A stretch of 64,000 nt of DNA, taken from positions 62,001-126,000 of IMG/VR virus record IMGVR_UViG_3300013104_000001; one strand, 5' to 3'. A program made the translations under genes and the position numbers. Below the pieces are notes generated by a model. It saw nothing but the letters and a program-made list of their open reading frames with translations, ran no database searches and was not told the origin of the DNA. Of the stretch, positions 6,374-49,785 are shown one piece after another (positions within the stretch are counted from its first letter, which is position 1; every line of letters starts with the position of its first letter).

Positions 6374-7525
6374 ATGCGTCAATATTTAGACGGGGTTCGT
6401 TATATCTTTGAAAACGGATCTCAACGCGGTGACCGTACTGGCGTGGGTACGTTATCTGTCTTCTCCATGAAACAGACTTACGACCTGCGCCAAGGCTTCC
6501 CGTTGGTTACCAGTAAAAAGGTTCGTATGGATTACATCCTTCATGAGCTCATTTCATTCCTGTCAGGTAATCCTGATATGCCGGGTATCAGTATCTGGGA
6601 TGACTGGCGTGTGAAGGAAGAGATTTCTCGCGAAATCCCGATGGATAATCCCGAGCGACTTACTGCCTGGTGCGAACTGTCTGATCTCAAACGTCCGATC
6701 GCTGAAGCACAGCTCAATGGCATGGGTTCTGTGAAAGCGGCTCATGCTTTCCTGGATCAACAGGGAGTGCCACGTAATAAGAAAGTTGTCCTGGTACCAG
6801 AAGGTGCACTCAATGCACCATACGGGCCAGCCTGGCGCGCGTGGAAGGGTCGTAATGGCGAAGTGCATGATCAGATCGGTTATCTGCTAAACATGCTTAA
6901 AACGAATCCTACGAGCCGTCGTATGGTGTTGTCTGCATGGGATCCCGGTAACATGCCAGATGAATCCATCAGCCCGCAGGATAATGTCATTGCTGGTAAG
7001 CCATGCCTGACTCCATGTCACTGGGCGTTCGAGCTGTACACCGATGAGATCCCGGTTGAAGATCGTATCAATTGGATCGAGGCTAACGCACCTAGCGTCT
7101 GGGATGACTACAACGAATGGTCCCATCGGGGTCACTGGCTAGGTGATACGGATAATAAACGTCTGAATGAGTTTATGGATGATGCTAACGTACCTAAGTA
7201 TTACCTGGATCTGAAATACCATCAGCGTTCATGCGACTACATGGTTGGCGTACCGTATAACATCGCAAGCTATGCCGCACTGCAGCACATGTTTGCCAAC
7301 TCGGTGAACATGATCCCACGTATGTTAGAAGCGGACATGACTAACGTGCATATTTACAATTTCCATAAGGAGAATGCAATTATGCAAGCGAGTCGTACCC
7401 CGCGTGAGTTACCACAACTCACTCTTCTTACTCACTGTGAAAAGCTGGAGGATTACAAGCTGGAAGACTTTAAGTTGGAAGGCTATGACCCACATCCATT
7501 TATTAAATATGAGAGAGCTGTGTAA
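6374..7525 (+). CDS. thyA: thymidylate synthase (with insertions)
   Basis: DRTGVGT, FPLVTSKK, SRRMVLSAW, catalytic PCH, QRSCD, PYNIASY, HIY. Confidence 0.95.
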   Translation: MRQYLDGVRYIFENGSQRGDRTGVGTLSVFSMKQTYDLRQGFPLVTSKKVRMDYILHELISFLSGNPDMPGISIWDDWRVKEEISREIPMDNPERLTAWCELSDLKRPIAEAQLNGMGSVKAAHAFLDQQGVPRNKKVVLVPEGALNAPYGPAWRAWKGRNGEVHDQIGYLLNMLKTNPTSRRMVLSAWDPGNMPDESISPQDNVIAGKPCLTPCHWAFELYTDEIPVEDRINWIEANAPSVWDDYNEWSHRGHWLGDTDNKRLNEFMDDANVPKYYLDLKYHQRSCDYMVGVPYNIASYAALQHMFANSVNMIPRMLEADMTNVHIYNFHKENAIMQASRTPRELPQLTLLTHCEKLEDYKLEDFKLEGYDPHPFIKYERAV

Positions 7526-15164: not shown

Positions 15165-17066
15165 ATGGCAGCTACAACTGATGTATTATCGCCCCTGCAA
15201 AGACTTCTCGCAAGTGCAAAGGATAATACCCGTGTTGTCACTATCAATAATGGCGAGATGTCCTATTTCCCATTAAGTGATTTAACCGAACAGCTCACCA
15301 ACCTCCTGAGTGTTGATGTGTTGAAAGCCAATGATGCGCTGTGCTTAATTGGCCAAATCCAATCTTTCGATGAACTGCGTAAAACCAAACCACGGATGGA
15401 AGGTGCCCGTATCTCTCTGCGTGGCTGGAATGCCAACACCTGTTGTGGTGGCGGTGAGTTCATCGGTCATCTTAGCAAAGGGAAAGATGATGGCGGTACG
15501 ATTGCCGCAGGTAATGGGTTCTACTGGGAACGTGTAATGACTGACCCGGCTGAGCTCAACGTAACACATTGGGGCGCGGTACCTGACTCGAAAACCGATG
15601 CTGTTCCGGCAATGCTGAATATGTACAACTGGTCACAGGCTAACTACCAAGGTGTCGGTGTACGTTTCCCAGCAGGAACATTCTTTGTCTCTTCCTTTAA
15701 ACCAGGCAGAGAGCTCAACATTATCCGCATTACTGGCAACCCGACCAACTTTGGTTATCATGGTTCGACAATCCTCGTGTCGAATGAAGATGATAACTTC
15801 ATGATTGATCTGACAGCCCGTAAAGTAGAATTGGCTAACTTCATTTTCCGCGGTACAACAACTGTTGATAAACCGACTAAGAAAAGTGTCTACAACAACG
15901 ACATCATCGGCGGTCAGTTCTTTAACGGTAGCTGTCTGCGTTTTGAAAACATCGGTGGTAAAAGTATCAAGCTGGTCGATACCCTCGATACCCGTATCAA
16001 TCAGTGGTATGTCTCACAGTGTACCGGTGATGTGATTACCTCGACATGGTCTGGTCGGGCTGCCGGAGTATGGGATCACAGTACTGCAATCGAACTGTCT
16101 AACTTCAACGTACAGAACGTTCGTGGCGCAATGGTCTTTAATCTCCCACGCTGTACTCAGTCGATGATGTACAATGGCTGGATTGAACACTGTGATGATC
16201 CAGGCGATCTGAACAACGGTCAATGGGTGGTTACCGCGCTTAGCATCGAAGAGTGTAAGAAACCACTGCGTGTGGCATACGCACGTCTTATTGAGACGGC
16301 TCGTAGTCTGCAGTCTGGTTCAAGCATCGATTACACACCAGATCCGAACATCACCGAATGGTTAAGCGAATGGGAACGTGGTCGTGTTGACTTACAGAAC
16401 TACGGGGTTTACACCGATGGTTCTCTTGAGTTCGGCGCCATGATGTCCCGTAACAAACTGAGCAACTCTGGTGTCTCACCGAAGTGGTTCCGTGTTGGTA
16501 AGTTCTTCTCACCTGCTGAAGGTGATCAGATCGATGTCAATCTGGTTGGTACTGGTAACTTCCTCTCAGCCAGCGCTGTACTGAACGATGTCGATGATAC
16601 CCGTCAAGGCGGTGGTAACACACTGATTCGTATTCAGTACAAGAAAGACGGTGCAATTGGCGGTACTTTAATGCCGATGGGTTCCTCACCTATCCAGGCT
16701 GCTAAGATCGTTAAAGATGGATCACGCTGTGTTCTTTATGTACAGCTGAAAGGTTACACCCGTAACGTTATCCCAATCATCACAGCAACGGGTAGCACGC
16801 ACTTTGAGAAAGGCGTGTCGTTCTACTTCCGTGCAGATGTCTCGCCGGTAACCGATGCTGAAGTCACAGCGCTGGTCAACTCGACAGATATCAGCGAGCA
16901 GTGGTCTATTGGTCAGAAAGCAGGTGTCGGCGCTACTAATGAAGGCGACCTGATTCTGAAGGGCAAGATTGTAGGTGACTTCCTGCAGGTGCGGGTTCAG
17001 GTTAACCAAGCCCAGTGGTCGAAGTCCGAGCTGCGCTATATCGAGCTCAAGAAAGAAGCAAAATAA
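15165..17066 (+). CDS. AmsF/WceF-like tailspike-fold (beta-helix) exopolysaccharide-modifying enzyme
   Basis: GGGEF…DDGGTI…WERV…LNVTHWGAVPD, WDHSTAIELSNFN, NGWIEH motifs typical of AmsF/WceF-type proteins. Confidence 0.75.
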   Translation: MAATTDVLSPLQRLLASAKDNTRVVTINNGEMSYFPLSDLTEQLTNLLSVDVLKANDALCLIGQIQSFDELRKTKPRMEGARISLRGWNANTCCGGGEFIGHLSKGKDDGGTIAAGNGFYWERVMTDPAELNVTHWGAVPDSKTDAVPAMLNMYNWSQANYQGVGVRFPAGTFFVSSFKPGRELNIIRITGNPTNFGYHGSTILVSNEDDNFMIDLTARKVELANFIFRGTTTVDKPTKKSVYNNDIIGGQFFNGSCLRFENIGGKSIKLVDTLDTRINQWYVSQCTGDVITSTWSGRAAGVWDHSTAIELSNFNVQNVRGAMVFNLPRCTQSMMYNGWIEHCDDPGDLNNGQWVVTALSIEECKKPLRVAYARLIETARSLQSGSSIDYTPDPNITEWLSEWERGRVDLQNYGVYTDGSLEFGAMMSRNKLSNSGVSPKWFRVGKFFSPAEGDQIDVNLVGTGNFLSASAVLNDVDDTRQGGGNTLIRIQYKKDGAIGGTLMPMGSSPIQAAKIVKDGSRCVLYVQLKGYTRNVIPIITATGSTHFEKGVSFYFRADVSPVTDAEVTALVNSTDISEQWSIGQKAGVGATNEGDLILKGKIVGDFLQVRVQVNQAQWSKSELRYIELKKEAK

Positions 17067-17146: not shown

Positions 17147-17222
17147 TGAATCAAGGAATATCGAGTCACTACACATGTGCAGTCAATCAATATTCAACAA
17201 TACCTCCAGGAACATACCGACC

Positions 17223-19478
17223 ATGAAATTAAAATCGCTTGCCGTTTCCGTTATTCTGTTTACAGCCGGAGCGAACGCTTCTCTGATCAATCTCGATCTG
17301 GGAATCCTGAACTCCACCGTCAACAAAACTACCGGTGACGTTACCGCCCTGAAAGAAACTACCGCGCTGCACACGCAGCAGATCGGTCAGCTGAATACCG
17401 GCCTGAACAACCTGAACACCAAAGTCGACACCTCTGTCAGTTACTTCAATGGTGAACTGGGTAAAACCAACTCGGCGCTGAACAACACCAACCTCAAAGC
17501 TGGCCAGGCATTCGACATCGCAGTCGAAGGTCGTGCAACGGCTAACAACGCACTGGCTACCTCTTACGGTAACGTTGCGGCAATCAACAACCTGGGCGCA
17601 AAGCTCAATGGCGAAATCGATGCGCGTGTTAGCGCTGATGACGCACTGAACGGTCGCATTGACAATCTGTCCACGTCTACGGCGAATGCCACCACAGCGC
17701 TGGATGGTAAGATCGACGCATTGTCTGCCGCAGGGACCGCGGCGATCGGGGCGGTTGACGGTAAAGTCGATACCCTGAATGGTAAAGTCAATGACCTGGC
17801 TGCAACCGGCGTGAAAGTTGCCGGTCAGCTGAATGACAAAATTGACGCTGGCGATAAAGCGCTGAGCACCCGTCTGGATTCGGCCATTGCTAATGCGCAA
17901 GCAGATAGCAAAGCGCTGGGTAACCGTGTTGATGTCGCACAAGCAACTGGCACTGCAGGCGTGGTACTCGGTACTGTCGCTAACCTGAAAGTAGATGCGC
18001 TGGGCGCAAAAGTGGATGCAACCACTAAAGCGCAAGCGGGCGTGAACAAATCTGTTGATGGTCGTCTGACTTCTGTTGAAGGCAAAACTGCACAAAACAG
18101 CAAAGATATCAGCGGTCTGAAAACTGGTCTGGCGACCACCAATACCAACGTGGGTAATCTGAACACCAAAGTGGACGGTGCGATTGCTACTCAGGCAGGT
18201 ATCAATAATCAGGTTCAACGGCAGTTCGGTGAAACAGGTGAGCGTATCGGTCGTACCGAAACTCGCCTGGATACAGCTGAAGGCGCGCTGCGTGATCAGG
18301 GTGATCATCTGAATGCAGTTGATGCACGTTCACAAAACAACGCCGTGCGTTTAGACGGTGTTGAAGGTGGTCTGCGTGAAACTAACGATCAGATGACCAA
18401 AGATCGTACCAACATCAATAACCGTGTAGACGGTGTTCAGTCACAGGTTGACAAAAACACCAACGACATTGTTAACGTTGGTAACGTTGCGAACGAAGGC
18501 TACAACAAAGCAGTGAACGCACAGAACACTGCTGACGTTGCAGTCGGTCTGGGTCAGAAGGGTATCAACGACGCCTACAATGCGCAGCAGACTGCTAACG
18601 CAGGTGTTGCCATCGGCCAGGATGCGAAGAACACAGCAATCAATGCGCAGAACACCGCGGATGTCGCTGTAGGCATGGGCCAGAAAAATGGCAATGACAT
18701 TGTCAATCTCGACAATCGCGTAACCACGAATACTGGTGCGATTCAAAAGAACAGCAATGACATCGTTAATCTGGATAACCGTACCACATCCAATACCCAG
18801 CAGATCCAGCAAACGCGGAACGATCTGGTTAACACGAACAATGTGCTGACTCAGAACGTGAAGCAGACTCAGTCTAACACCAACCGCATCACCACGGCTG
18901 AAGGCACCATCGCAACGCATACCTCGCAGATTGCGAACCACGAAGGTCGTATCACAACCAATGAAAACAATATCACTAAGAACACCAGTGATATCAAAGA
19001 AACTCAGACGGTTGTGAACAATCAGGGTAAAGTGATTAACAATCACGAGACGCGTATCACTAACAATGAAACGAACATCTCTAACCTGAGCAACGACTAC
19101 TACCAGTTCCAGGATATCTACAACCAGAACAACCAGATCATCAACAACAACATCAATAACTCTTCTGCCCGCACTCTGCAGCAGTCTAAGAGCTATACTG
19201 ATCAGCAAGTTGGTAACCTGCGTAACGAAGTGAACCGTAACAAAGATGAAGCGCGTTCCGGCGTGGCTTCTGTTGCGGCGATGGCTAACATTCCACAGGT
19301 GGCTGGACAGACGTTTACTGTTGGTGCAGGTATTGGTCAGTATAAAGACAAGACTGCATTGGCCGTCGGTGGCGTGTGGGCAGTAAGCCCTAACGTTGCT
19401 GCTAAGACTTCTATCGGCTTCTCTTCTGGCAGTGGTTCTGATGTAGTTGCTGGCGCCGGTCTTGGCTTCGGCTTCTAA
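17223..19478 (+). CDS. YadA-family trimeric autotransporter adhesin
   Basis: signal peptide MKLKSLAVSVILFTAGANA, long Asn/Thr-rich coiled-coil stalk, anchor GVASVAAMANIPQ…GAGLGFGF with terminal Phe. Confidence 0.9.
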   Translation: MKLKSLAVSVILFTAGANASLINLDLGILNSTVNKTTGDVTALKETTALHTQQIGQLNTGLNNLNTKVDTSVSYFNGELGKTNSALNNTNLKAGQAFDIAVEGRATANNALATSYGNVAAINNLGAKLNGEIDARVSADDALNGRIDNLSTSTANATTALDGKIDALSAAGTAAIGAVDGKVDTLNGKVNDLAATGVKVAGQLNDKIDAGDKALSTRLDSAIANAQADSKALGNRVDVAQATGTAGVVLGTVANLKVDALGAKVDATTKAQAGVNKSVDGRLTSVEGKTAQNSKDISGLKTGLATTNTNVGNLNTKVDGAIATQAGINNQVQRQFGETGERIGRTETRLDTAEGALRDQGDHLNAVDARSQNNAVRLDGVEGGLRETNDQMTKDRTNINNRVDGVQSQVDKNTNDIVNVGNVANEGYNKAVNAQNTADVAVGLGQKGINDAYNAQQTANAGVAIGQDAKNTAINAQNTADVAVGMGQKNGNDIVNLDNRVTTNTGAIQKNSNDIVNLDNRTTSNTQQIQQTRNDLVNTNNVLTQNVKQTQSNTNRITTAEGTIATHTSQIANHEGRITTNENNITKNTSDIKETQTVVNNQGKVINNHETRITNNETNISNLSNDYYQFQDIYNQNNQIINNNINNSSARTLQQSKSYTDQQVGNLRNEVNRNKDEARSGVASVAAMANIPQVAGQTFTVGAGIGQYKDKTALAVGGVWAVSPNVAAKTSIGFSSGSGSDVVAGAGLGFGF

Positions 19479-20888: not shown

Positions 20889-21632
20889 ATGGTTACAGCA
20901 CGTAAGCAATCCGAATCACTCGGTGAACATCGTGAGGCATTTGATGCCCGTAACAAAGACCTCAAACCGAATGAACATGAGAAAGGATGGAGTGAGCAAA
21001 TTCGTCCCGTTGATAATGCAAGAGTTCAGGAAATTGCCGAATGGTTCGCGAACAGCGAATCGCAGTATCACCTCAGTACGCTGAAGAACTATGCGATTGG
21101 TATCACCAAATCAACTGATCCGCGTTGGAAGCTACAAACTGCTTTCAATAAGTTGTCTAAAGCGATTGGTTATCAGAGTTACAACGATTTGCTTGATTAT
21201 GCTAAAGCTAATAGCCATGTAATAACCAATCGCTTATTTGACCCTAAAAAGAAAGATAAGCGACAGTTAGTATTTTGGAAAAATAACTCGGGAACATATT
21301 GCGCAACATTAGTTGACCAAGGTGTTAGTATCGAAGGGGTAGTTGTATTTGCCCGCAATAAGACGGCAAAGAAAACTAATAGAAGAAACAAAATTGCAGA
21401 GCATAATCTTAGCATACAAGAACTAGAGCGCTTGGTCGGCGCTACCCCCAGTTATAGTCGTAAAGAATTTAATCTGGTACGTAATGAGCTCGTAAGAGCA
21501 ATGACTATTGCTAAATACCCCGACAGATCTCCTGGACTGGCAATTAAAATGGTATTGCAATGGATCGGTCAACCGAGTATTGATCTATTTGATCAATACG
21601 AAATATTACCTAATCGTAACTTCAAAAAGTGA
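20889..21632 (+). CDS. hypothetical protein (paralogue of 11190..11855)
   Basis: MVTARKQSESLGEH; IGYQSYNDL motif. Confidence 0.75.
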   Translation: MVTARKQSESLGEHREAFDARNKDLKPNEHEKGWSEQIRPVDNARVQEIAEWFANSESQYHLSTLKNYAIGITKSTDPRWKLQTAFNKLSKAIGYQSYNDLLDYAKANSHVITNRLFDPKKKDKRQLVFWKNNSGTYCATLVDQGVSIEGVVVFARNKTAKKTNRRNKIAEHNLSIQELERLVGATPSYSRKEFNLVRNELVRAMTIAKYPDRSPGLAIKMVLQWIGQPSIDLFDQYEILPNRNFKK

Positions 21633-21639
21633 GTATACA

Positions 21640-22110
21640 ATGAGCGAAATTAAATTTAAAGATGTGCGTTATTACGATGTTATCAGTCAGGGGCAATTAG
21701 CCGCAGGTAAAGTAATCCTGTTAACACTTAAAGGTCACCAGGCTGGCGTAATGACACCGGTGGTGCAGTGGGCGAAAGATAACCTGCTGGGCGCGTTCGT
21801 GGTGTACGGCACTGTTGACGATATGACCACCATCCTTGATGACCTGCCGGCGACCAATCAATCTATCGCCGTAGTACTGACCGGTGCAACATTCCCTGTC
21901 ACTGAAATCATGCATTGGGCACGCACTAACAACGTAACTGTGTTCCTGGCCCATGACGCGAATACAATACTGCCACGGTATCAAATACTGTTACCAAGCT
22001 GCGTCGTTCAGTTGACTTATGATCACACTGGGCGTGTTGCTAACGCAACGACTATTCGTAATCAGGAACTGGCAACAGGTTGGGTAGTTGACTTTACTGA
22101 GGATAAGTAA
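21640..22110 (+). CDS. hypothetical protein
   Basis: ATG 21640 in ORF 21508..22110. Confidence 0.65.
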   Translation: MSEIKFKDVRYYDVISQGQLAAGKVILLTLKGHQAGVMTPVVQWAKDNLLGAFVVYGTVDDMTTILDDLPATNQSIAVVLTGATFPVTEIMHWARTNNVTVFLAHDANTILPRYQILLPSCVVQLTYDHTGRVANATTIRNQELATGWVVDFTEDK

Positions 22111-22593
22111 ATGCCTGGTATAAAAGGAGGGGATGATATCGCAGGCCTTGCTGAATTAAAGCTTGGTCTCGTGACAATCATCGATCGATTGGAAAGTCTG
22201 TACTTGCAGGCTAAGCACGATCATACGTACCACACTGATGCAGGGCGTTTGCTTGAGGGCACGCCAGGTATCATGCTGGAGATCTGGGATGCGATCATTA
22301 CCGCTTATGACGAAGGTCCAACTGATTTCAGTAATGGCTGGCCTGATCGGTCATTAGCAGAAGCGACTAAAGAATGCATCGAACGCATGCGCAGCGAGTT
22401 CGGTCCATTCGGTTACGCCTCATCAAATATCGTTGAGCGTGATGGTGTGACACTCAAACCTAAGGCGTTTAATGACTTACGTTTGAAGATCATTGAAGAT
22501 CATCGTCCGGTTGACATGCCTATTCAGTTAGACATGTTTGTAGAACAGGTCGTTAAGTCGATCACTCATTTCAGCAGCATCAATCCAATTTAA
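22111..22593 (+). CDS. hypothetical protein
   Basis: GAGGA RBS. Confidence 0.7.
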   Translation: MPGIKGGDDIAGLAELKLGLVTIIDRLESLYLQAKHDHTYHTDAGRLLEGTPGIMLEIWDAIITAYDEGPTDFSNGWPDRSLAEATKECIERMRSEFGPFGYASSNIVERDGVTLKPKAFNDLRLKIIEDHRPVDMPIQLDMFVEQVVKSITHFSSINPI

Positions 22594-26442: not shown

Positions 26443-27576
26443 ATGCAGTATAGTACTTTTAATACCAATAAAAACGATCAGATGGCTGAACCAATGTTTC
26501 TGGGTCAGTCGGTCAACGTTTCGCGTTATGACCAGCAGAAGTACGACATCTTTGAAAAGCTGATCGAAAAGCAGTTGAGCTTCTTCTGGCGTCCCGAAGA
26601 AGTTGATGTGTCTCAGGACCGCATCGACTTCAATGGTCTGCCGGATCATGAGAAGCACATCTTTATCAGCAACCTGAAATACCAGACACTGCTGGACTCT
26701 ATTCAGGGTCGTTCGCCAAACGTGGCGCTGCTACCAATCACGTCTCTGCCAGAACTCGAAACCTGGATTGAGACCTGGGCATTCTCTGAAACCATCCACT
26801 CGCGTTCGTATACCCACATCATCCGTAACATCTTTACGGAGCCGGGCATTATCTTTGATGACATCGTCACCAACGAACACATCAAGGCGCGTGCTGAGTC
26901 CGTATCTGAATACTACGATCAGCTGATCGAAGAGTGCATGTACTACAACCTGCTGGGCGCTGGCACACACAGCATCAACGGCAAGAAGGTTGAAGTTTCA
27001 CTGCGTTCAATCAAACGTCTGGTGTATCTGTGCATTGTGTCAGTTAACGTACTGGAAGCGATTCGTTTCTATGTTTCGTTCGCTTGCTCGTTTGCGTTTG
27101 CAGAACGCGAGCTGATGGAAGGTAACGCGAAGATCATCAAACTGATCGCACGTGATGAAGCATTGCACCTGACCGGCACACAGCACATGATCATGCTAAT
27201 GCGTAGCGGCGCTGATGACCCAGAAATGGCTGACATCGCGAAAGAGTGTGAAGGTGAAGTCTACGCGATCTTCAAAGATGCAGCAGAGCAGGAAAAGGAT
27301 TGGGCAGAATATCTGTTCAGTGGCGGTTCAATGATCGGTCTGAACAAAGAGATCGTTTGCCAGTACATTGAATACATCACTAACATCCGTATCCGTGCGA
27401 TTGGTTATAACGACATCTATACTGGCGTTAAAGCTAACCCAATCCCATGGATCAATTCCTGGTTGGTTTCTGACAACGTGCAGGTTGCACCGCAGGAAGT
27501 AGAAGTATCCTCTTACCTGGTCGGTCAGATCGACTCGAAGGTAGATACCAACGACTTCGACGACTTCCAGCTGTAA
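26443..27576 (+). CDS. nrdB: class Ia ribonucleotide reductase beta subunit
   Basis: [51 protein letters not shown]; enterobacterial-type. Confidence 0.97.
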
Positions 27577-27625
27577 GGACCACCGCCCATCCTTCGGGGT
27601 GGGCTTTCTTTAATAAGGAGAGACC

Positions 27626-33594: not shown

Positions 33595-34614
33595 ATGAGC
33601 GATTATAAACCGTTATCACCCATCGTCAGTGATAAGGTAGGTAAAGATGCGTATACCGGTCAACCTACTGTCGATTACATGGCGTTTGAAAAGAGCGGTC
33701 TTGATGAACTGTTAGCCATGCATCCTTCGCATGCGCTGTTTATCCGAGACCGTCAGGCGCCACCATTGTACTATTCTTCAATACCACTGGATGAGCTGGA
33801 AGCGAAAGAGTTTCCACTGGTATTGTCTATCATCGGCCCTGTTGACCAAGAGACGAAGCATATCGTTCTTGAAGCAGCGGGGCTTACTGAAATTCAAGCG
33901 CTTAGCGCAATTCTTAAACAGAATGAGCAAGATGCTAAACAGGGCAAATTCTTAATGACTACCGATACCACCAACGTTAACTACTTCGAACTGATTCGTG
34001 ACTGGGGTAAAGCTCGCAACATCATCGGTGGCGGTTCTACACCAATCGATCAGTTTATCAAAGGCATGACCGAAGCCTCTGAAGCCTGGGGTAACATCCT
34101 CGGCAACCAGACCGATAACCTGAAAGACGATATCGGCGATGTGCTGGTTTGTCTGACACAGTCCTTCGGCATCATCGATAGCATTAAGATCGAAGACGCT
34201 GCTACTGACCTTGGCCCGTGGCTGCGTGAAGCACGTATCGAATATCAGAACCACGGTGTGTGGGGCGACAAACGTCTGGCGCTGTCTGTCCTGCGTAAAC
34301 TCGGTAATATCTCTCGTGAAGTTGAGCTGGCGCAGTTTGAACCAGACCATCACCGTCCAGACGAGATGATGGACTGCACTGCAGACCTGGTAGCTGACCT
34401 GGTTGTGCTGGCCGAGTCTAAAGGCTGGACACTGCAGGAATGTCTGGAAGAAGCCTACAACGATATCAAAGATCGTAAAGGCGTGATGTACAATGGCGGT
34501 TTCGTGAAAGAAGCGAGCCTGTCGGTTGAGCGCGCTAAAGAGATGTTAGCATCTGGTACTGTTGGTGGTGTCGGCGCAGAATACCTGAACGGCTATATCG
34601 CAGCTAATAGCTGA
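33595..34614 (+). CDS. MazG-like nucleotide pyrophosphohydrolase with N-terminal extension
   Basis: WGKARNI…EASE…KDDIGDVLV…ECLEEAYNDIKDRKG…FVKE. Confidence 0.8.
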   Translation: MSDYKPLSPIVSDKVGKDAYTGQPTVDYMAFEKSGLDELLAMHPSHALFIRDRQAPPLYYSSIPLDELEAKEFPLVLSIIGPVDQETKHIVLEAAGLTEIQALSAILKQNEQDAKQGKFLMTTDTTNVNYFELIRDWGKARNIIGGGSTPIDQFIKGMTEASEAWGNILGNQTDNLKDDIGDVLVCLTQSFGIIDSIKIEDAATDLGPWLREARIEYQNHGVWGDKRLALSVLRKLGNISREVELAQFEPDHHRPDEMMDCTADLVADLVVLAESKGWTLQECLEEAYNDIKDRKGVMYNGGFVKEASLSVERAKEMLASGTVGGVGAEYLNGYIAANS

Positions 34615-37426: not shown

Positions 37427-37462
37427 TAATTAAAAACTAGACAGCGTAATATTATGTCCATT

Positions 37463-37513
37463 AGGGGGTCTGGTGAAAGCCATATCCCCTTAGGTTATGC
37501 TGTCTTTTTTTTT
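37463..37513 (+). terminator. imperfect hairpin + TTATGCTG + T tract
   Basis: AGGGGGT…ATCCCCT, TTATGCTG 37495-37502. Confidence 0.6.
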
Positions 37514-37595
37514 GGTTAAGAAATACTACCCTTCTCCATTATATGTCATTTAGTTTACACATTGTAAAACTTCACACAAAGCAAGCGAGAGTCAT

Positions 37596-37739
37596 ATGTC
37601 AAAACCTGAAGAATTCGATATGAACGGTCTGGAAGATCTGGACCTGGAAGGCGCTGAGAAAGCAGCAGAAGTAAAAGCAGCAGGTGGCGGCGAAGCGCTG
37701 TCTGACGCTGAATCAGATTGCGAAGGTTGCAAGATCTAA
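37596..37739 (+). CDS. 47-aa acidic peptide resembling the C-terminal redox-shuttle tail of ribonucleotide reductase alpha (not in ORF track)
   Basis: MSKPEEFDMNGLEDLDLEGAEKAAEVKAAGGGEALSDAESDCEGCKI*; GAGAG RBS; all Leu codons CTG; sits alone in a gene-sized gap. Confidence 0.8.
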   Translation: MSKPEEFDMNGLEDLDLEGAEKAAEVKAAGGGEALSDAESDCEGCKI

Positions 37740-39772: not shown

Positions 39773-40351
39773 ATGGCAAAACTTACATTCTATTATGCTT
39801 CAATGAACGCAGGAAAATCCACAGCGTGTATTCAAGCAGGTTACAACTATATTGAACGTGGCATGCATGCGCTCATGATTAAACCTGAAGTCGATGACCG
39901 TGATGACAAAAATAGAGTCAGCTCACGTGTCGGCTTATCGGCCAAAGCTATGGTGTTTGATGCCGAGGCTAATCTGTACGAATTAGTCTTGCTGCAAATG
40001 AAAACCTCGAAAGTCTCTGTCGTGTTAGTTGATGAAGCGCAGTTCCTCACCAAAGAACAGGTCACTGAACTTAGCGACATTGCTGATTTCAATGACGTGC
40101 CAGTTGTGTGTTATGGATTGCGCACTGACTTCCAGGGCGAACCTTTCCCAGGCTCTGCCGCACTCATGGCCCGTGCTGATCGTCTTAATGAATTGATCGG
40201 TGTATGTCACTGTGGTTCAAAAGCCCACTTTGTATTGCGTCGTGACGAAAAAGGTCATGTTGTAAAAGAAGGCGAGCAAATTCTCATTGGCGGGAATGAT
40301 CGTTACGAAGCCGTCTGTCGTAAACATCACCGCCTTGCAATGCTTAGTTAA
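39773..40351 (+). CDS. tdk: thymidine kinase
   Basis: SMNAGKST, VDEAQFL, YGLRTDF, CHCG, IGGNDRY…CRKH. Confidence 0.96.
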   Translation: MAKLTFYYASMNAGKSTACIQAGYNYIERGMHALMIKPEVDDRDDKNRVSSRVGLSAKAMVFDAEANLYELVLLQMKTSKVSVVLVDEAQFLTKEQVTELSDIADFNDVPVVCYGLRTDFQGEPFPGSAALMARADRLNELIGVCHCGSKAHFVLRRDEKGHVVKEGEQILIGGNDRYEAVCRKHHRLAMLS

Positions 40352-41206: not shown

Positions 41207-41566
41207 ATGAACAGTTTAATTCTGGATGTAACCCCTAACGTGATATCCGTCACGCGCAGATTCACTAATGCAAACTGGGAAGGTATTTTACGTGATATCA
41301 GTTTGCGTGTTCTAAAACAATACGAGGAAGTGCGGGCAACTAACCGTGTTCCTTATTTGGATACTGTTTACTTGCAGGAGCTACAGTGGCGTTATGGTTT
41401 TGAAAGGAATGACCAAGCGGTGCTGACCCAATTTACCGAACTGTATAACAACTTATACTCAGCCATTGCCGGGTATGTCAATTCGATTAACCCCACCAAC
41501 CTGTTGACCGTTGTTCAAGTAACGACAGCCAACAATGTCTTCCAATTGCATTTAGGGTATGCCTAA
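41207..41566 (+). CDS. hypothetical protein
   Basis: first gene after promoter motif; TAATG coupling to hslU. Confidence 0.7.
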   Translation: MNSLILDVTPNVISVTRRFTNANWEGILRDISLRVLKQYEEVRATNRVPYLDTVYLQELQWRYGFERNDQAVLTQFTELYNNLYSAIAGYVNSINPTNLLTVVQVTTANNVFQLHLGYA

Positions 41567-43299
41567 TGTCTACCATGACCACTAATGAAGTTGTTGAACA
41601 CTTAGACCAGTATGTAATTGGTCAGATGGAACCTAAACGTGCCATTGCACTGGCGTATCGTGAACGTATGCTCAAAGCCGAAAACACCGGCGCTGAATGG
41701 AAATACATTACGCCTTCTAACATCCTCATGGTCGGACCTTCAGGTTCCGGTAAAACTGAATTAGCCAGGCAGCTGGCTGAGATGACGAACAGTCCTTTCG
41801 TTAAATGCGAAATCACCGAATTCACTCAGGTGGGTTATCACGGTCGTGACGTTAAAGCAATCCTGACTGACTTAGTCAATGACGCGGTACGTATTGCACC
41901 TGCCATCTGGGCCAAAGAGAATAAGCCGAAACTCTCTAAGTCGGCACGTGACATGTTATCCCTGATACTCAAGGATAAAGCGGAACGGGAAATGTTCTCA
42001 AAGGTAATGAACATTCCTGATGACAAACTCACCTTGACATCATTAGAGGAGGCGCTACTTAGCAAGAACTCTGTGTACCGTAAAATCAATATAAGCTATC
42101 GCTGGTATAGCGACATGATCATCGCGGCAGCAACAAAGAAGAAACGCGATGAAGAACCCGCTGAACCCGAACCTAACATCCTTGAGGACAGTGCAGCCTG
42201 GTCGCAATGGTACATCCGCAACAAACTTAATCCCCGCAGCTTTGGTATTCGGGCTAACGATGAAGTGCAACATATTCGTCATGCCGCCATGTTGCTGGAT
42301 TCAGTTGGTGCGAAAGATACTAAGCTTGAAGAAGCCCTGGTCGAGAACATCGGTGCGCCTTTTAATGAAGCACGTAAAAAGATCAGCTCTAAAGGCCGAG
42401 GTATCGGCAAGATCATCAAGTTCTTAATGGATCATAAACTTGAGGGTGATAAGGACGCGTCGATTGAAGTCCTTAAAGCATTGGCGCCGTTTAAGAAAGT
42501 GCAGTTGGATAATGTCATTGATATCAGTGATGCCCTGCGTACCAGTTCTGAACCACCTGCTGACTTCATCGTCAAATTGGTAGAAGAGCGTGGCATTGTC
42601 TTCATCGATGAATTCGATAAGATCTTTGTCGACTTGCGTGGGTCCAACGTGGGTAACATGGGTGTGGTGCGTGACTTGATGCCTTACCTGGATGGTGTCA
42701 TTGCTGACGTTCCTACAATCACTGACCGTGACCGTAGTGGTGGTATGTTTGGTACTCGCAGTGAAACGTATCAGATCAATACCGCTAATATCCTCTGGAT
42801 CGCATCAGGTGCGTTTCATCTGGCTAAGGTCTCAGATGTACCTGCCGAGATCTTAGGACGTCTCCCAGTGCATGTCACGCTCAATCAGCTGAAAGCAGAT
42901 GACCTGGAAAAAGTATTGATTAAACCACATGGCTCGTTAATCAATGCAATCACCACGGTACTGAAAGCAGAAGGCGTTGATTTCGTTATTGAACCTACTG
43001 CCATTCGTGCTATTGCTGAACTTGCTTTTGAAGCTAACACTTACGGTGAAGATACCGGTGCTCGTCGGTTGAAGACCGTTTGTCGTGAACTGTTCGGTGA
43101 CTTACTGTATACCGCCTCTAACTTACCACCTGACCAACGTAAGGTACGTTTCACCGCCGCACAAGTGAACGCAGCTCACGACCGCATTATGGCGAACGTT
43201 ACTAAACGTAAAGAGAAGAAAGAGCCGGGTCAGAAAGAACGCGAAGACTTCAAACAAATGCTTGATGCCATTCGCGGCAAAGTTACCCAACCCGATTAA
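41566..43299 (+). CDS. hslU: HslU/ClpY-like AAA+ ATPase
   Basis: LDQYVIGQ, GPSGSGKTELAR, GIVFIDEFDKI, GAFH, GRLP, GARRL. Confidence 0.88.
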   Translation: MSTMTTNEVVEHLDQYVIGQMEPKRAIALAYRERMLKAENTGAEWKYITPSNILMVGPSGSGKTELARQLAEMTNSPFVKCEITEFTQVGYHGRDVKAILTDLVNDAVRIAPAIWAKENKPKLSKSARDMLSLILKDKAEREMFSKVMNIPDDKLTLTSLEEALLSKNSVYRKINISYRWYSDMIIAAATKKKRDEEPAEPEPNILEDSAAWSQWYIRNKLNPRSFGIRANDEVQHIRHAAMLLDSVGAKDTKLEEALVENIGAPFNEARKKISSKGRGIGKIIKFLMDHKLEGDKDASIEVLKALAPFKKVQLDNVIDISDALRTSSEPPADFIVKLVEERGIVFIDEFDKIFVDLRGSNVGNMGVVRDLMPYLDGVIADVPTITDRDRSGGMFGTRSETYQINTANILWIASGAFHLAKVSDVPAEILGRLPVHVTLNQLKADDLEKVLIKPHGSLINAITTVLKAEGVDFVIEPTAIRAIAELAFEANTYGEDTGARRLKTVCRELFGDLLYTASNLPPDQRKVRFTAAQVNAAHDRIMANVTKRKEKKEPGQKEREDFKQMLDAIRGKVTQPD

Positions 43300-45557: not shown

Positions 45558-46175
45558 ATGAACATCGTCAACAGTATTATCAAACTTGGCTCAGGTAACG
45601 AGCCGTGCACAATAACCATTGATCACGATCAAGAAACCGGCGACGCGAATGCTAAACTCCAATACATGAGTGCCGATATCATCGACATCACCTGGGGTAT
45701 TAAGAAACGTAAGGACACGAAGTTCCGGTTAGGCGCAACAGCACATGGGTTAACCCAGCTCTATTTGTACGTGCATCACAATCTGATCAAAACAGACAGT
45801 CCGTTGGTGCGCGACTACTTCACATGGAAGCGTGAAGAGATCTTAGAGAATATCAAAACACTCGGGATCATCTACAACGGTGATGAGTGGTGGGATAAGC
45901 TCAAACAATCTTTCTTCCGTCTGGCGATTGTTGAACAGAAGTCAGAAACGTTAAAAGCAGTGATGGTCTTAACTAGCGATGCCAAAGAGCATAAAGCTTT
46001 TTACACCATCAGTGCTGATTCCAAACTGACGGGCAGAGAAAATAGTGGCCGGACACAATTACTGGGTGTGAGCACCCGTATCGTCAGTTATTACAATCTG
46101 ACAGAATCACCTGAATCAATTGATTCTATTTTGGCGAAGTACACCCCTGAACACGTTACAGCAAAAGCTGTTTAA
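45558..46175 (+). CDS. hypothetical protein
   Basis: ORF track. Confidence 0.7.
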   Translation: MNIVNSIIKLGSGNEPCTITIDHDQETGDANAKLQYMSADIIDITWGIKKRKDTKFRLGATAHGLTQLYLYVHHNLIKTDSPLVRDYFTWKREEILENIKTLGIIYNGDEWWDKLKQSFFRLAIVEQKSETLKAVMVLTSDAKEHKAFYTISADSKLTGRENSGRTQLLGVSTRIVSYYNLTESPESIDSILAKYTPEHVTAKAV

Positions 46176-46188
46176 AAAGGAACGTAGT

Positions 46189-47817
46189 ATGACTAAGCAG
46201 ATTCAAGATATGGTTTTCGCTATTCGACTCGGCGACAGTACACCTGGTGTTGATTATCGGATGATAAGCCTGGTCAATGACGATGGGCATTTGGTAATCG
46301 AACATCCCGTTCCAACCAATATGTCCAACTACTTACTCAGCCTGCCGACTGACGAGAGCAATAAGAAGTGTGCAGCCTATCTGGCCATTGCTTATAACTA
46401 CACGCGTGACTATCGTGAAGGGTGTGGTGCAGCAGCGGCTGAGTTCGCACGTTCTGCCTGGGCATGTCTTGAGCAGTATGTTGTTGAAAAGGGCCTGGGC
46501 GAATTCACTAACGAAGACTTTACCGATATCACGGTTGTTGACTACATCGATGGATTGCCATCCGCGATGATCACCAGTCCTAACGGCTCTGAAGTTGTTA
46601 TCACATTACGTCGTCAGAATGGTCAGCTGTGGACTGAACACGTTCGTCACTTTACTGATGAAGATGTCATTCCAACAATTGCTGAGCTGTACGAAGAATG
46701 GGGGCAGGCTGATAGCGCACGTCAACAGATCGAACCTGCAGCGGTAATGAGCTTTGGTGAAGTGAACTTCGTCTACGCTGTCGATGTCTCTGAAGCGGCA
46801 CGGGTGCGCCGTGAAGCAGTACTGCAGATCACAGTTGGTGATCGTGTGGTTGTTGAGCAGCGTATCTTTGAAGGTAGCAAACCACTGCTGTACTTCATCC
46901 TGGAAGTATTCAACATGTTGGCGCTGCGTTTTCGTATCGGCAGTGTTGCGACAATCCAGGAAGATGATCGTGTCCTTATCCTGAACGCCATCATCGGTAT
47001 TCTCAGTAACCACATGCGCATGGGCGAGCACGTCCAAATGGAAGCGGGTCTCGTGTACGCGTACGAAGGCAGCATTGATGATCAGGTGACGTATTCGGTC
47101 AGTCATGAACTCACTGCTGAGAATCGCATCAAGGCCATCTATCGCTTCATGCGTATGTCTGATGACACCATGCGTCGCAGTGTGGAAATGGTTGACGAGG
47201 TCGAGTATCTCGAATCACCTATGACCCCAATGGAATTCTACAACGCGTTCCAGGAAAACATTGCGCGTGAGCTCGGTGTTGCACGTCGCTTTGATATCGC
47301 AATGATTGCTGCGGTAGATCAGCAAAATGGTCTGGGTAAAGATAATGAGCTGCTGTTCCGTATTAAAGAAGACATGCAGTACTTTAGAGAGAGTACTCTG
47401 CATTCTCCGGTAATCATGGGACGCAAGACTTATGACTCCTTGCCTAACCCGTTGGTTGATCGTCTGAACATCGTTATTACGTCTCAGCCAATCAAAGACC
47501 ATACTACCAAGTCAGGCGTTGTCTTTGTGAATAGCAAAGAAGAAGCTCTGGCCAAAGCAGTAGGGTATCTGACTGAGAATGGTGGCGATAAGATCTGGAT
47601 CATCGGTGGTGCACAGATCTATGCAATGTTCCTGCCAGATGCATCTGAGTTACATCTGACCATCATCTACGCAGAACGTGAAGATGCGGATACCTTCTTC
47701 CCTGAGTTTAACCACAGCGCGTATGATGCTGAGGCGCTGTTTGAGCAGCATCAGATCATCACACGTGAAGGTGAAGAGATCGCCTACAATCGTTTCATCC
47801 TGCGTCCTAAGTCGTAA
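46189..47817 (+). CDS. large unknown N-terminal region fused to dihydrofolate reductase
   Basis: C-terminal IAAVDQQNGLG…DMQYF…IMGRKTYDSL…LVDRLNIVIT…IIGGAQIY…ADTFFP. Confidence 0.85.
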   Translation: MTKQIQDMVFAIRLGDSTPGVDYRMISLVNDDGHLVIEHPVPTNMSNYLLSLPTDESNKKCAAYLAIAYNYTRDYREGCGAAAAEFARSAWACLEQYVVEKGLGEFTNEDFTDITVVDYIDGLPSAMITSPNGSEVVITLRRQNGQLWTEHVRHFTDEDVIPTIAELYEEWGQADSARQQIEPAAVMSFGEVNFVYAVDVSEAARVRREAVLQITVGDRVVVEQRIFEGSKPLLYFILEVFNMLALRFRIGSVATIQEDDRVLILNAIIGILSNHMRMGEHVQMEAGLVYAYEGSIDDQVTYSVSHELTAENRIKAIYRFMRMSDDTMRRSVEMVDEVEYLESPMTPMEFYNAFQENIARELGVARRFDIAMIAAVDQQNGLGKDNELLFRIKEDMQYFRESTLHSPVIMGRKTYDSLPNPLVDRLNIVITSQPIKDHTTKSGVVFVNSKEEALAKAVGYLTENGGDKIWIIGGAQIYAMFLPDASELHLTIIYAEREDADTFFPEFNHSAYDAEALFEQHQIITREGEEIAYNRFILRPKS

Positions 47818-48929: not shown

Positions 48930-49370
48930 ATGTTAACTGAAATAGTTACACACTGGGCGCACGTGCGTTTGACCTTGGGTGTAGACCCAGACAAACATAT
49001 TCATGTGTTGGTCCCGTGTCAGTTAGACGAACCCATTGACTTCGTCGAACGTTTTGCAAGTGATGCATTCATAAGCGTCATACCTTGCATCTGGTCCTGT
49101 CTTTATCGTCGTGAATTATCTCTGACAAGTTTGGAGTTGATTTACGACCGTGTCACACCTACCATCATCGACTTGATTGATGTCGTCCGTAACTCTTTAA
49201 AAGAAATGGATGATAAGCGCATTGTACTTCTCTCATCTGACGACGCTTTAATGGGCTGGTTAGAAGGCGGCACTAACAGAAATATTAAATGGTGCAACTC
49301 AACACAATTTATCCACAGTAAACAGCCCTACATGGTGTTTACAGTTACGGAGTATGCAGATGGTGATTGA
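48930..49370 (+). CDS. hypothetical protein
   Basis: GGAG RBS, ATG 48930. Confidence 0.6.
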   Translation: MLTEIVTHWAHVRLTLGVDPDKHIHVLVPCQLDEPIDFVERFASDAFISVIPCIWSCLYRRELSLTSLELIYDRVTPTIIDLIDVVRNSLKEMDDKRIVLLSSDDALMGWLEGGTNRNIKWCNSTQFIHSKQPYMVFTVTEYADGD

Positions 49371-49785
49371 ACCGTGTCCACTCTGCGCATCAAAAGCCCA
49401 TACGTTTAAGTTCGCGCTGGTATTCTGGGGTGTGAAGTGTAGCAGTTGCATGCTCGTGCTAAAAGATATGAACACGTCTGAAGCCAGTGCAATTAAGCAA
49501 TGGGACACGCGCATCTCACCGGAAGAGAAAGCCGCTAAGAAAGGGAAGAAAGCCAAAGCTAAAAGCAAAGGTGATTTCGTGTTCTATGTGGATGGTGAAC
49601 TGATCTCTGTTTGGTCGTATGAAGAACACATCCCGCACGAGCTAAGCCTGAAGCATAGTTTATTCATATCTGATACAATTACAGCGGAACGTGCGATTCG
49701 TCATAGCTGTGCCAGCCGACAGATGGTTACCTGGAATTGCAACGGTCATTGTAAGTTAGTGTTTAGACCAATTGAAAAGGAATGA
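49354..49785 (+). CDS. Lar-like zinc-ribbon protein
   Basis: PCPLC…CSSC…AIKQWDTR. Confidence 0.6.
   Translation: MQMVIEPCPLCASKAHTFKFALVFWGVKCSSCMLVLKDMNTSEASAIKQWDTRISPEEKAAKKGKKAKAKSKGDFVFYVDGELISVWSYEEHIPHELSLKHSLFISDTITAERAIRHSCASRQMVTWNCNGHCKLVFRPIEKE

What the first reader, a model, noticed from the sequence alone, without database searches (positions are those of the whole stretch)
37596..37739. Free-standing ribonucleotide-reductase-alpha C-terminal tail encoded as its own 47-aa gene, with nrdB but no nrdA in the window
Seen: an unannotated ORF, MSKPEEFDMNGLEDLDLEGAEKAAEVKAAGGGEALSDAESDCEGCKI*, with an RBS and strongly biased codons, alone in a gap after a terminator. It is acidic and Ala/Gly-rich and ends in CxxCKI. 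Established: class Ia RNR alpha subunits end in an acidic disordered tail whose Cys pair (E. coli NrdA …DDGCESGACKI, C754/C759) carries electrons from thioredoxin/glutaredoxin to the active-site disulfide; other alpha subunits use CxxC spacing. The window has an enterobacterial-type nrdB (26443-27576) with no adjacent nrdA. Inference: the phage supplies the re-reduction tail in trans, either to boost host NrdA paired with phage NrdB or to complement a tail-less phage NrdA elsewhere. Alternatively it is a decoy that occupies NrdA or Trx/Grx. A split, trans-acting RNR redox shuttle would be a new way to rewire dNTP supply.
Basis: partly seen in the sequence, partly recalled or inferred. Interest (0 to 1): 0.9.

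Follow-up and report, generated by a model that had tools for sequence, protein, structure and literature searches.

The report
Free-standing RNR-tail-like small protein gene
A real, probably highly expressed 47-codon phage gene encodes a small acidic protein ending in the same cysteine-pair motif that ribonucleotide reductase large subunits use to fetch electrons. It belongs to an uncharacterised family found in many phages and in the chromosomes of their bacterial hosts, so it is not a broken-off piece of a phage enzyme.

Summary
The ORF is real. It has 47 codons at 37596-37739(+) and sits between a strong terminator and the next gene. It has an RBS, a higher codon-adaptation score than 11 long genes in the window, and pN/pS of 0.23-0.43.

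It is not an orphan. It matches phrog_10239 (function unknown) and is annotated as 'hypothetical' in Agricanvirus phages. Relatives occur in at least five unrelated phage groups. A 43-aa chromosomal version turned up in 113 of the 120 bacterial genome loci returned (Erwinia, Pantoea, Serratia, Rahnella, Hafnia and others). Nearly all members end in DCEGCKI-COOH.

That heptapeptide is also the natural C-terminus of true class Ia NrdA proteins: Pantoea phage Phynn, four IMG/VR phage contigs and a divergent MAG NrdA. Host NrdA ends GCESGACKI. So the resemblance to the RNR alpha tail holds.

The 'split RNR paired with phage NrdB' reading does not hold:
- The complete related genome RAY has no NrdA body.
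- Two phages that carry the gene have no nrd genes at all.
- The Erwinia and Pantoea NrdAs I retrieved keep a complete tail.

In jumbo phages the gene lies among dNTP-metabolism genes. My best reading is a free dithiol tail that plugs into the host Trx/Grx-to-NrdA electron relay, with a shuttle favoured over a decoy. This is unproven. The same tail is fused to Acb4-family (anti-CBASS sponge) proteins, so an anti-defence role remains a live rival.

The parts
37596..37739 (+). CDS for a 47-aa acidic protein (14 D/E, 4 K/R), a member of phrog_10239. It has an N-terminal acidic-hydrophobic motif (EEFDMNGLEDLDLE), a central helix (AEKAAEVKAA), a GGGEA linker and the invariant C-terminal DCEGCKI.
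   Evidence: (phrog_10239, E 9.4e-25, full length)
37587..37591 (+). Shine-Dalgarno-like GAGAG, 4 nt upstream of the ATG
   Evidence: A purine-rich AGAGA stretch sits at the same place in relatives.
37536..37545 (+). Conserved CCATTATATG element about 50-60 nt upstream of the ATG. It is a candidate promoter of the phage's own RNA polymerase (inference only).
   Evidence: invariant in window, RAY, AH06 and L012, while the flanking spacer varies.
37439..37513 (+). Intrinsic terminator that closes the upstream gene: a long hairpin plus a run of nine T
   Evidence: dG -34.9, z -5.9; conserved with compensating context
26443..27576 (+). Context: phage nrdB (class Ia beta subunit), host-like, with an intact C-terminal alpha-binding tail ([20 protein letters not shown]). 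No nrdA partner in the window.
39773..40351 (+). Context: thymidine kinase, 2 kb downstream
   Evidence: (annotated TK in RAY and Ea35-70)
33595..34614 (+). Context: homologue of RAY gp102 (MazG-type nucleoside triphosphate pyrophosphohydrolase), 3 kb upstream

Best explanation
The gene encodes a small, acidic, mostly disordered protein. It is a phage copy of a small-protein family that also sits in the chromosomes of Erwiniaceae, Yersiniaceae and related Enterobacterales.

The family's defining feature is an invariant C-terminal D-C-E-G-C-K-I-COOH on a flexible acidic linker. This is the same dithiol tail that class Ia ribonucleotide reductase alpha subunits use. That tail reaches into the active site, reduces the C225-C462 disulfide, and is then re-reduced by thioredoxin or glutaredoxin.

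Most likely the protein takes part in that thiol-disulfide relay as a free tail acting in trans. It would be reduced by host Trx/Grx and exchange with host NrdA, on which this phage must rely because it brings only NrdB. Both cysteines are invariant, which is what a dithiol/disulfide cycle needs, so I favour an auxiliary electron shuttle that speeds re-reduction of host NrdA over a dead-end inhibitor. The conserved N-terminal F-D-x-D / L-D motif and helix would supply docking.

Shown: the gene is real and conserved, it belongs to the family, its tail is identical to real NrdA tails, nrdA is absent, and it lies near dNTP-metabolism genes.

Inferred: any contact with Trx, Grx or NrdA, and the direction of the effect.
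For: (1) The gene is real and under purifying selection, with the highest codon adaptation among the genes tested.

(2) DCEGCKI-stop is the natural end of true NrdAs. These are Pantoea phage Phynn (Pfam barrel 2.3e-121), IMG/VR L021, L063, L071 and L082, and a MAG NrdA only 31% identical to E. coli NrdA. T4 NrdA ends DDCAACKL. Erwinia, Pantoea and E. coli NrdA end DDGCESGACKI.

(3) From the pattern's degeneracy I estimate about one chance match in IMG/VR. The scan found 92. Apart from one spurious antisense class, they are this family, NrdAs, or tail fusions.

(4) Both Cys and the K-I end are invariant across 33 aligned phage and bacterial members that are otherwise about 40% identical. The same holds across the 17 clusters found among 1.84 billion representative proteins.

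(5) RAY has nrdB but no nrdA. The phage NrdB keeps a host-like alpha-binding tail and is made during infection (MS in Deimos-Minion, PMC6690015).

(6) In several separate jumbo-phage lineages the gene lies 1.3-6 kb from thymidine kinase, dCMP deaminase, thymidylate synthase or MazG, although gene order differs.

(7) AF2 gives one helix and a low-confidence C-terminal tail, which fits a tethered linear motif.

(8) Established mechanism of the C-terminal Cys pair: PMC4078304.
Against: - The tail has Cx2C spacing, while the host NrdA tail has Cx4C. It is therefore not an exact copy of the host tail.
- Erwinia and Pantoea, which carry the chromosomal version, have NrdAs with complete tails. The need for a second tail is not obvious.
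- There is no genomic linkage to nrd genes in any fetched flank. Pfam found no Trx/Grx fold among the CxxC-containing ORFs of the window; trx/grx genes were not searched for in the other loci.
- NrdR boxes are not enriched upstream of the bacterial genes. E. coli nrdA, the positive control, scores 14 of 16.
- The same tail is fused to Acb4-family cyclic-nucleotide sponge domains in N4-like phages. An RNR role does not explain this.
- A free tail loses the high local concentration of a tethered one.
- An attempt to reconstitute a class II RNR from a separately expressed C-terminal redox domain failed (PMC5704485).
- No expression or biochemical data exist for this protein.
Confidence: 0.4

Rival explanations
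1. Competitive decoy. The free tail occupies the NrdA active-site channel, or soaks up Trx/Grx, and so lowers or re-routes host RNR activity. This would be analogous to the small disordered RNR inhibitors of yeast.
For: It has the same tail identity as the best explanation. It is small, acidic and disordered. The N-terminal F-D-x-x-x-L / F-D-F motif loosely recalls the acidic Phe/Leu-rich NrdB tail that binds NrdA (comparison by eye only). There is precedent for small disordered RNR inhibitors (Hug1, PMC4245953; Sml1, PMC2965251).
Against: A phage that carries nrdB, thyA, TK, DHFR and a dTMP kinase is investing in dNTP supply, not blocking it. Strict retention of both cysteines is not needed for a simple blocker. 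The probable high expression would be costly to the chromosomal hosts if it were inhibitory.
Confidence: 0.2
2. Anti-defence module. The acidic tail binds or distracts a host immune component, and the likeness to NrdA tails reflects that target's specificity.
For: The last 16-20 residues (A-x-D-L-...-DCEGCKI) are fused to PF13876 domains in N4-like Erwinia/Pantoea phages. PF13876 is the Acb4 anti-CBASS sponge family (bioRxiv 10.1101/2024.12.30.630793). Fusion to known sponges has already been used successfully to find new anti-defence proteins (10.1101/2025.07.12.664507). Small, acidic, highly expressed phage proteins are often counter-defence factors (general knowledge).
Against: The family is a syntenic chromosomal gene next to yedI or ylaC in 90 of 113 bacterial loci, not in prophages or defence islands. 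No known defence system is recognised as reading an RNR tail. It lies among nucleotide-metabolism genes in jumbo phages.
Confidence: 0.15
3. Metal-binding or oligomerisation element. Two CxxC tails share a Zn or Fe ion (zinc-hook style), or the acidic protein carries metal for NrdB or another enzyme.
For: It has a single CxxC per chain at a flexible end. It has a very acidic N-terminal motif with weak, non-significant likeness to EF-hand loops (E 1.5). The tail occurs on Acb4-family proteins, and SPO1 Acb4 is tetrameric.
Against: Exact identity of seven residues, including the non-liganding E, G, K and I, with functional RNR redox tails is not required for metal binding. No second Cys or His pair is conserved.
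Confidence: 0.1
4. RiPP precursor: a conserved acidic leader (an F-D/N-L-D box like class I lanthipeptide leaders, recalled from memory) and a short Cys-containing core.
For: There is a leader-like F-[DN]-L-D motif and an invariant C-terminal heptapeptide.
Against: No modifying, protease or export genes are conserved next to it in phages or bacteria. No conserved Ser/Thr lies near the Cys pair. The same heptapeptide ends 750-aa enzymes.
Confidence: 0.03
5. A tail supplied to a tail-less phage NrdA encoded elsewhere, or a decaying remnant of nrdA.
For: The window holds nrdB without nrdA.
Against: The whole RAY genome has no NrdA-like sequence. The gene lies about 10 kb downstream of nrdB, whereas nrdA directly precedes nrdB in E. 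coli and in Phynn. It has an N-terminal module of its own that is conserved across phages and bacteria, and it is under purifying selection. The rest of the window's own 287-kb contig could not be read here.
Confidence: 0.02

Closest known systems
C-terminal redox tail of class Ia RNR alpha (E. coli NrdA C754/C759; T4 NrdA; Phynn NrdA)
   Same: An acidic flexible stretch ending in a Cys pair followed by K-[IL]-COOH. DCEGCKI is letter-for-letter the end of several real NrdAs.
   Different: Here the tail is not attached to any catalytic body. It is preceded by a family-specific N-terminal motif and helix. The spacing is Cx2C, whereas the host's own NrdA has Cx4C.
Split class II RNR NrdJa + NrdJb (a genetically separate C-terminal Cys-rich electron-transfer domain; PMC5704485)
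   Same: It is precedent for an RNR's C-terminal electron-delivery element being encoded apart from the catalytic part.
   Different: NrdJb is a folded zinc-binding domain encoded with its NrdJa partner. Here there is no partner lacking a tail. The element is a 47-aa linear-motif protein, and it also occurs in genomes with a complete NrdA.
Small intrinsically disordered RNR regulators of yeast (Sml1, Hug1, Dif1/Spd1)
   Same: They are very small, disordered proteins that act on RNR subunits. From my own knowledge, Sml1 is reported to compete with the Rnr1 CX2C tail. Hug1 binds Rnr2 (PMC4245953).
   Different: No sequence relationship was tested or is expected. Those proteins are inhibitors without a redox Cys pair. 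This family keeps both cysteines.
phrog_10239 and unnamed 43-aa 'hypothetical proteins' of Erwinia, Pantoea and Serratia
   Same: Direct family membership.
   Different: The phage branch has a GGGEA insertion and an MSxPEEF start. Some phage members carry N-terminal extensions of 40-180 aa.
Acb4 (PF13876) anti-CBASS sponges carrying the same tail in N4-like phages
   Same: They share the last 16-20 residues, including DCEGCKI.
   Different: The window's protein has no PF13876 domain. The fusions lack the F-D-L-D motif.

Membership tests
phrog_10239 (PHROGs v4, function unknown) | Full-length match to the family profile | tested here: met
   E 9.4e-25, residues 1-47 on profile positions 1-47 of 47
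Class Ia RNR alpha subunit (NrdA) | Catalytic barrel (PF02867) and all-alpha domain (PF00317) | tested here: not met
   no Pfam family in the 47-aa product. Genuine NrdAs give 1e-114 to 1e-121.
Class Ia RNR alpha subunit (NrdA) | Acidic C-terminal tail ending in a Cys pair plus K-[IL]-COOH | tested here: met
Class Ia RNR alpha subunit (NrdA) | Gene next to nrdB | tested here: not met
   It lies about 10 kb downstream of nrdB. No nrd gene lies in the flanks of any free-standing member.
Split RNR genes (Aeh1 nrdA-a/nrdA-b type; class II NrdJa/NrdJb) | A partner ORF in the same genome encoding the rest of the alpha subunit | tested here: not met
   tblastn of E. coli and Phynn NrdA against the window and the whole RAY genome gives no hit with E below 1. 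The remainder of the window's own contig could not be read.
Thioredoxin-fold oxidoreductases (Trx, Grx, NrdH) | CxxC embedded in a thioredoxin fold | tested here: not met
   No Pfam hit. AF2 gives one helix and no fold.
RiPP / class I lanthipeptide precursor | Adjacent modification or export genes, and Ser/Thr partners for the Cys residues in the core | tested here: not met
   Neighbours are unrelated and variable. No conserved Ser/Thr.
Small disordered RNR regulators (Sml1/Hug1 type) | Direct binding to an RNR subunit that alters activity | not testable with these tools
   Only disorder and size could be checked. No multimer prediction or assay is available here.
Acb4 sponge (PF13876) | PF13876 domain | tested here: not met
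   (none). Fusion proteins in other phages score 1e-15 to 1e-28.

The most novel reading that the evidence does not exclude
Enterobacterales and their phages encode a previously unrecognised, free-standing 'RNR alpha tail' protein. It acts in trans in the thioredoxin/glutaredoxin-to-RNR electron relay. Phages that lack their own NrdA, including nucleus-forming jumbo phages that bring only NrdB, deploy it to raise dNTP output from host NrdA. T4-like Pantoea phages have given their own NrdA the same tail so as to tap the same host reductant.
Probability: 0.3. Interest if true: 0.85.

Novelty: new variant of a known kind. Interest (0 to 1): 0.62.

Why it matters
Re-reduction of the active-site disulfide through the alpha tail is thought to limit class Ia RNR turnover (my recollection of the E. 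coli kinetic literature).

A conserved small protein that carries this tail on its own would be a new accessory or regulatory component of one of the best-studied enzymes in biology. It is present in fire-blight Erwinia, Pantoea and Serratia, and it has been copied by several unrelated phage groups. It would also be a new handle by which phages tune the nucleotide supply.

The claim is directly testable with existing E. coli RNR/Trx/Grx assays. Even if the RNR link fails, the family is an unexplained, probably highly expressed small protein. It has a seven-residue end that is essentially invariant, and that end has also been grafted onto Acb4-family (anti-CBASS sponge) proteins.

Tried and rejected
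- The consensus terminator/promoter scan found nothing useful. Folding was needed.
- The word-indexed protein search found only seven close relatives. The full HMMER scan found 17 clusters and no NrdA, because only about 10 residues are shared.
- Pfam and NCBIfam have no model for the phage or the bacterial protein.
- The PDB profile search gave only non-significant EF-hand and Swi6 matches.
- About 50 DCEGCKI hits in prophage contigs are the antisense frame of a 173-aa gene that I read as KilA-N-like (not tested against Pfam). I discarded them.
- The 767-aa ORF at 17175-19478 is not NrdA. It has a YadA-anchor domain.
- Pfam found no Trx/Grx-fold protein among the CxxC-containing ORFs of the window.
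- NrdR boxes are not enriched upstream of the bacterial genes.
- The E. coli gene in the same chromosomal slot, yodC, is unrelated. blastn finds no match in 5,426 E. coli genomes, with limited sensitivity.
- AF2 of a 146-aa long form gave pLDDT 53.6, too poor for a fold search.
- Literature searches for the motif string and for the concept returned nothing relevant.
- I could not establish whether other peptide-bearing jumbo phages (pEa_SNUABM_5, Y3, Wellington) carry nrdA.

Full report
**1.

Positions 37596-37739 (+) encode the quoted 47-aa peptide. A GAGAG Shine-Dalgarno-like element lies 4 nt before the ATG.

The upstream gene is closed by a long hairpin (37439-37505) followed by nine T. 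The simple scanner missed it. Folding gives -34.9 kcal/mol, z = -5.9, with none of 200 shuffles as stable. The hairpin and a CCATTATATG element about 50-60 nt before the ATG are conserved in four relatives. The gene therefore looks like its own transcription unit.

Its codon-adaptation score against 11 long genes of the window is 0.856. That is above every one of those genes (0.67-0.80) and above all 2000 synonymous recodings.

Pairwise pN/pS against three relatives is 0.23-0.43. The overlapping antisense ORF is broken in two of them.

**2. Where the window comes from**

The window is part of IMG/VR contig IMGVR_UViG_3300013104_000001 (287 kb). It is a jumbo Erwinia phage about 77-80% identical in DNA to Agricanvirus phages such as RAY and Ea35-70. 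The RAY record annotates chimallin and PhuZ, so these are nucleus-forming phages.

In those GenBank records the homologue is an annotated hypothetical protein, for example RAY gp108, which is 87% identical.

I read the full RAY annotation and ran tblastn with E. coli NrdA and NrdB against the whole RAY genome and the window.
- NrdB is present. It is 76.7% identical to E. coli NrdB over its full length, and its alpha-binding tail is intact.
- Nothing resembles NrdA; the best E-value is 1.7.
- NrdB protein was detected by mass spectrometry in a Deimos-Minion lysate (PMC6690015).

So 'nrdB without nrdA' is true for the complete genome of a close relative, not only for this window.

**3.

It matches phrog_10239 (function unknown) at 9.4e-25 over its full length. 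No Pfam or NCBIfam model exists.

Relatives occur in several unrelated phage groups:
- other jumbo lineages: pEa_SNUABM_5 (a 208-aa long form), Wellington/Kwan (63 aa) and Y3-like phages;
- about 50-kb myoviruses such as DIBBI;
- a podovirus of Salmonella (KKP 3828, Autographiviridae).

A profile search of 1.84 billion representative proteins found 17 clusters at E <= 0.001, four of them at E <= 1e-10. In the 16 retrieved (41-223 aa) the match lies at, or in one readthrough-like case near, the C-terminus.

The shared module is about 40 residues long:
- an acidic-hydrophobic motif ([DE]-F-[DN]-Φ-D..L-D/E);
- a short helix (A-E-K-x-A);
- an acidic linker;
- D-C-E-G-C-K-I-stop, which is essentially invariant.

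Within those invariant codons there are synonymous differences (GAT/GAC, TGC/TGT, GGT/GGC/GGG, AAG/AAA, ATC/ATT). Selection is therefore on the peptide, not on the DNA.

**4. An unexpected result: a chromosomal version in host bacteria**

I scanned one genome per bacterial species for the exact back-translated heptapeptide plus stop. Of those rows, 113 are a 43-aa chromosomal gene of the form M-[SNK]-D-D-[IM]-F-[ED]-F-D-I-D-A-...-DCEGCKI. It occurs in Erwinia, Pantoea, Mixta, Tatumella, Serratia, Rahnella, Ewingella, Rouxiella, Sodalis, Hafnia, Budvicia and others.

Databases call it 'hypothetical protein'.

It sits directly downstream, on the same strand, of yedI (DUF808; 61 loci) or ylaC (29 loci). 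This is conserved chromosomal synteny, not a prophage setting.

E. coli has an unrelated gene, yodC, in that slot. blastn finds no match in 5,426 complete E. coli genomes.

The bacterial and phage proteins align end to end. The phage gene is therefore a relative of a host small protein, not a fragment of nrdA.

**5. The resemblance to the RNR tail is nevertheless real and specific**

DCEGCKI-stop is the natural C-terminus of bona fide NrdAs:
- Pantoea phage Phynn, a T4-like phage (barrel domain 2.3e-121);
- four IMG/VR NrdAs (L021, L063, L071, L082);
- a MAG NrdA only 31% identical to E. coli NrdA (L162).

T4 NrdA ends DDCAACKL. Erwinia, Pantoea, Salmonella and E. coli NrdAs end DDGC[EG]SGACKI. 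In other words, the family's tail has the RNR-tail form with Cx2C spacing, while the host enzyme uses Cx4C.

From the pattern's degeneracy I estimate about one chance match in IMG/VR. The scan found 92. Apart from one spurious class, all are this family, NrdAs, or proteins with the same tail grafted on. The spurious class is the antisense frame of a 173-aa prophage gene that I read as KilA-N-like.

When whole genomes of KKP 3828 and DIBBI are searched with a full NrdA, the only thing found is the last 10-16 residues of this small protein. Neither genome has nrdA or nrdB.

**6.

The 'split RNR' picture fails.
- There is no tail-less NrdA to complement.
- The gene is not linked to nrdB, either here (about 10 kb apart) or in any fetched flank.
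- It occurs in two phages with no RNR genes, and in bacterial genera whose retrieved NrdAs have a complete tail.

What survives is the idea that a free copy of the tail works in trans on host components.

Support for a nucleotide-metabolism role comes from gene neighbourhood. In several separate jumbo lineages with different gene orders the gene lies 1.3-6 kb from thymidine kinase, MazG, dCMP deaminase or thymidylate synthase.

AF2 predicts one central helix (residues 17-31) and a low-confidence, unstructured C-terminal tail (mean pLDDT 66). That is what one expects of a docking motif plus a flexible reactive end.

**7. Mechanism: inference, not shown**

The established chemistry is that the alpha tail's Cys pair reduces the active-site disulfide and is then reduced by thioredoxin or glutaredoxin (PMC4078304).

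A soluble peptide with the same end should be a substrate of the same reductants. It could also enter the same channel of NrdA.

Every family member keeps both cysteines at fixed spacing, which a dithiol/disulfide cycle needs and a simple plug does not. I therefore favour an auxiliary shuttle over a decoy. The data cannot decide between them.

Points against:
- the host tail has different spacing;
- the host bacteria appear to have a complete tail already;
- no NrdR boxes lie upstream of the bacterial genes;
- Pfam found no Trx/Grx fold among the CxxC-containing ORFs of the window;
- a separately expressed class II C-terminal redox domain failed to reconstitute activity in trans (PMC5704485).

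**8. A clue that points elsewhere**

In N4-like Erwinia/Pantoea phages the last 16-20 residues of the family, including DCEGCKI, are fused to a PF13876 domain.

PF13876 is the Acb4 family of anti-CBASS cyclic-nucleotide sponges (bioRxiv 10.1101/2024.12.30.630793). Fusion partners of such sponges have proved to be further anti-defence proteins (10.1101/2025.07.12.664507).

The tail thus behaves as a portable module. An anti-defence target recognised through this tail is a serious rival. Metal-mediated pairing of CxxC tails is a weaker one. A RiPP-precursor reading fails for lack of any conserved modifying genes.

**9. Comparison with what is known, and verdict**

The protein is a member of phrog_10239. 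It is not an NrdA, because it has no catalytic domains, and it is not a thioredoxin-fold protein.

The nearest precedents are:
- the NrdA tail itself;
- the split class II NrdJa/NrdJb, where a C-terminal Cys-rich electron-transfer domain is a separate gene;
- the small disordered RNR regulators of yeast.

I found no paper that mentions the motif or the idea.

The finding is more general than proposed, because this is a host-and-phage small-protein family with an RNR-type redox tail. It is less exotic than a split enzyme. Its function is still open, and it is directly testable with standard RNR/Trx/Grx biochemistry.

Noticed in passing
window 17175-19478 (+): A 767-aa phage ORF whose last 58 residues match the YadA-like membrane anchor domain (PF03895, 1.6e-9). 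It lies just after the EPS-depolymerase-like gene (15165-17066). RAY annotates only a 233-aa gene at the corresponding place.
   Followed up: no
window 49354-49785 (+): A 143-aa ORF with two CxxC motifs and a near-threshold match to the Lar restriction-alleviation family (PF14354, 28.1 bits against a cut-off of 28.6).
   Followed up: no
window 46120-47817 (+): A 565-aa protein in which the DHFR domain occupies only residues 393-538. The N-terminal ~390 residues have no Pfam match.
   Followed up: no
L004 (RAY) 21228-22126; window 27577-27625: RAY has a homing endonuclease (gp89) right after nrdB. It is followed by a duplicated 24-aa copy of the NrdB C-terminal tail (75% identical to E. coli NrdB residues 353-376). 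The window goes straight from nrdB (ends 27576) to the next ORF at 27626, a gap too short to hold such an endonuclease gene.
   Followed up: partly
L057 1913-2266(-), L098 5055-5408(+), L048 1753-2106(+), L088 441-758(+): Acb4-family (PF13876) proteins of 106-118 aa in N4-like Erwinia/Pantoea phages end in the same A-x-D-L...DCEGCKI tail as the small-protein family.
   Followed up: partly
L142 4515-4643(-) and 112 other bacterial loci (L112-L231): A conserved, unnamed 43-aa chromosomal gene ending in DCEGCKI lies downstream of yedI (DUF808) or ylaC. In six loci inspected, the four from Serratia, Rahnella and Hafnia show a TATACT-type -10 element about 45-50 nt upstream of the start codon.
   Followed up: partly
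L024 6839-7240(+) and about 50 near-identical prophage loci: A Cys/Ser/Arg-rich ORF ending in DCEGCKI is the antisense frame of a 173-aa gene (6895-7416, -) that I read as KilA-N-like. It is a single chance match multiplied by sampling of related prophages.
   Followed up: yes
L100 3323-3760(+), L015 5497-6120(+): Long forms of the family (146-223 aa) in Y3-like and Rivsvirus jumbo phages share an extra conserved ~45-aa helical segment (D-G-x-x-F-R ... L-x-x-x-W-x-x-Y-S-A-x-P) ahead of the common module. AF2 confidence was too low to search folds.
   Followed up: partly
window 41566-43299 (+): A 577-aa AAA+ ATPase of the HslU/ClpX type (AAA_2, 1.6e-15). RAY additionally annotates an SspB-like ClpXP adaptor, which suggests that these phages meddle with host proteolysis.
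   Followed up: no
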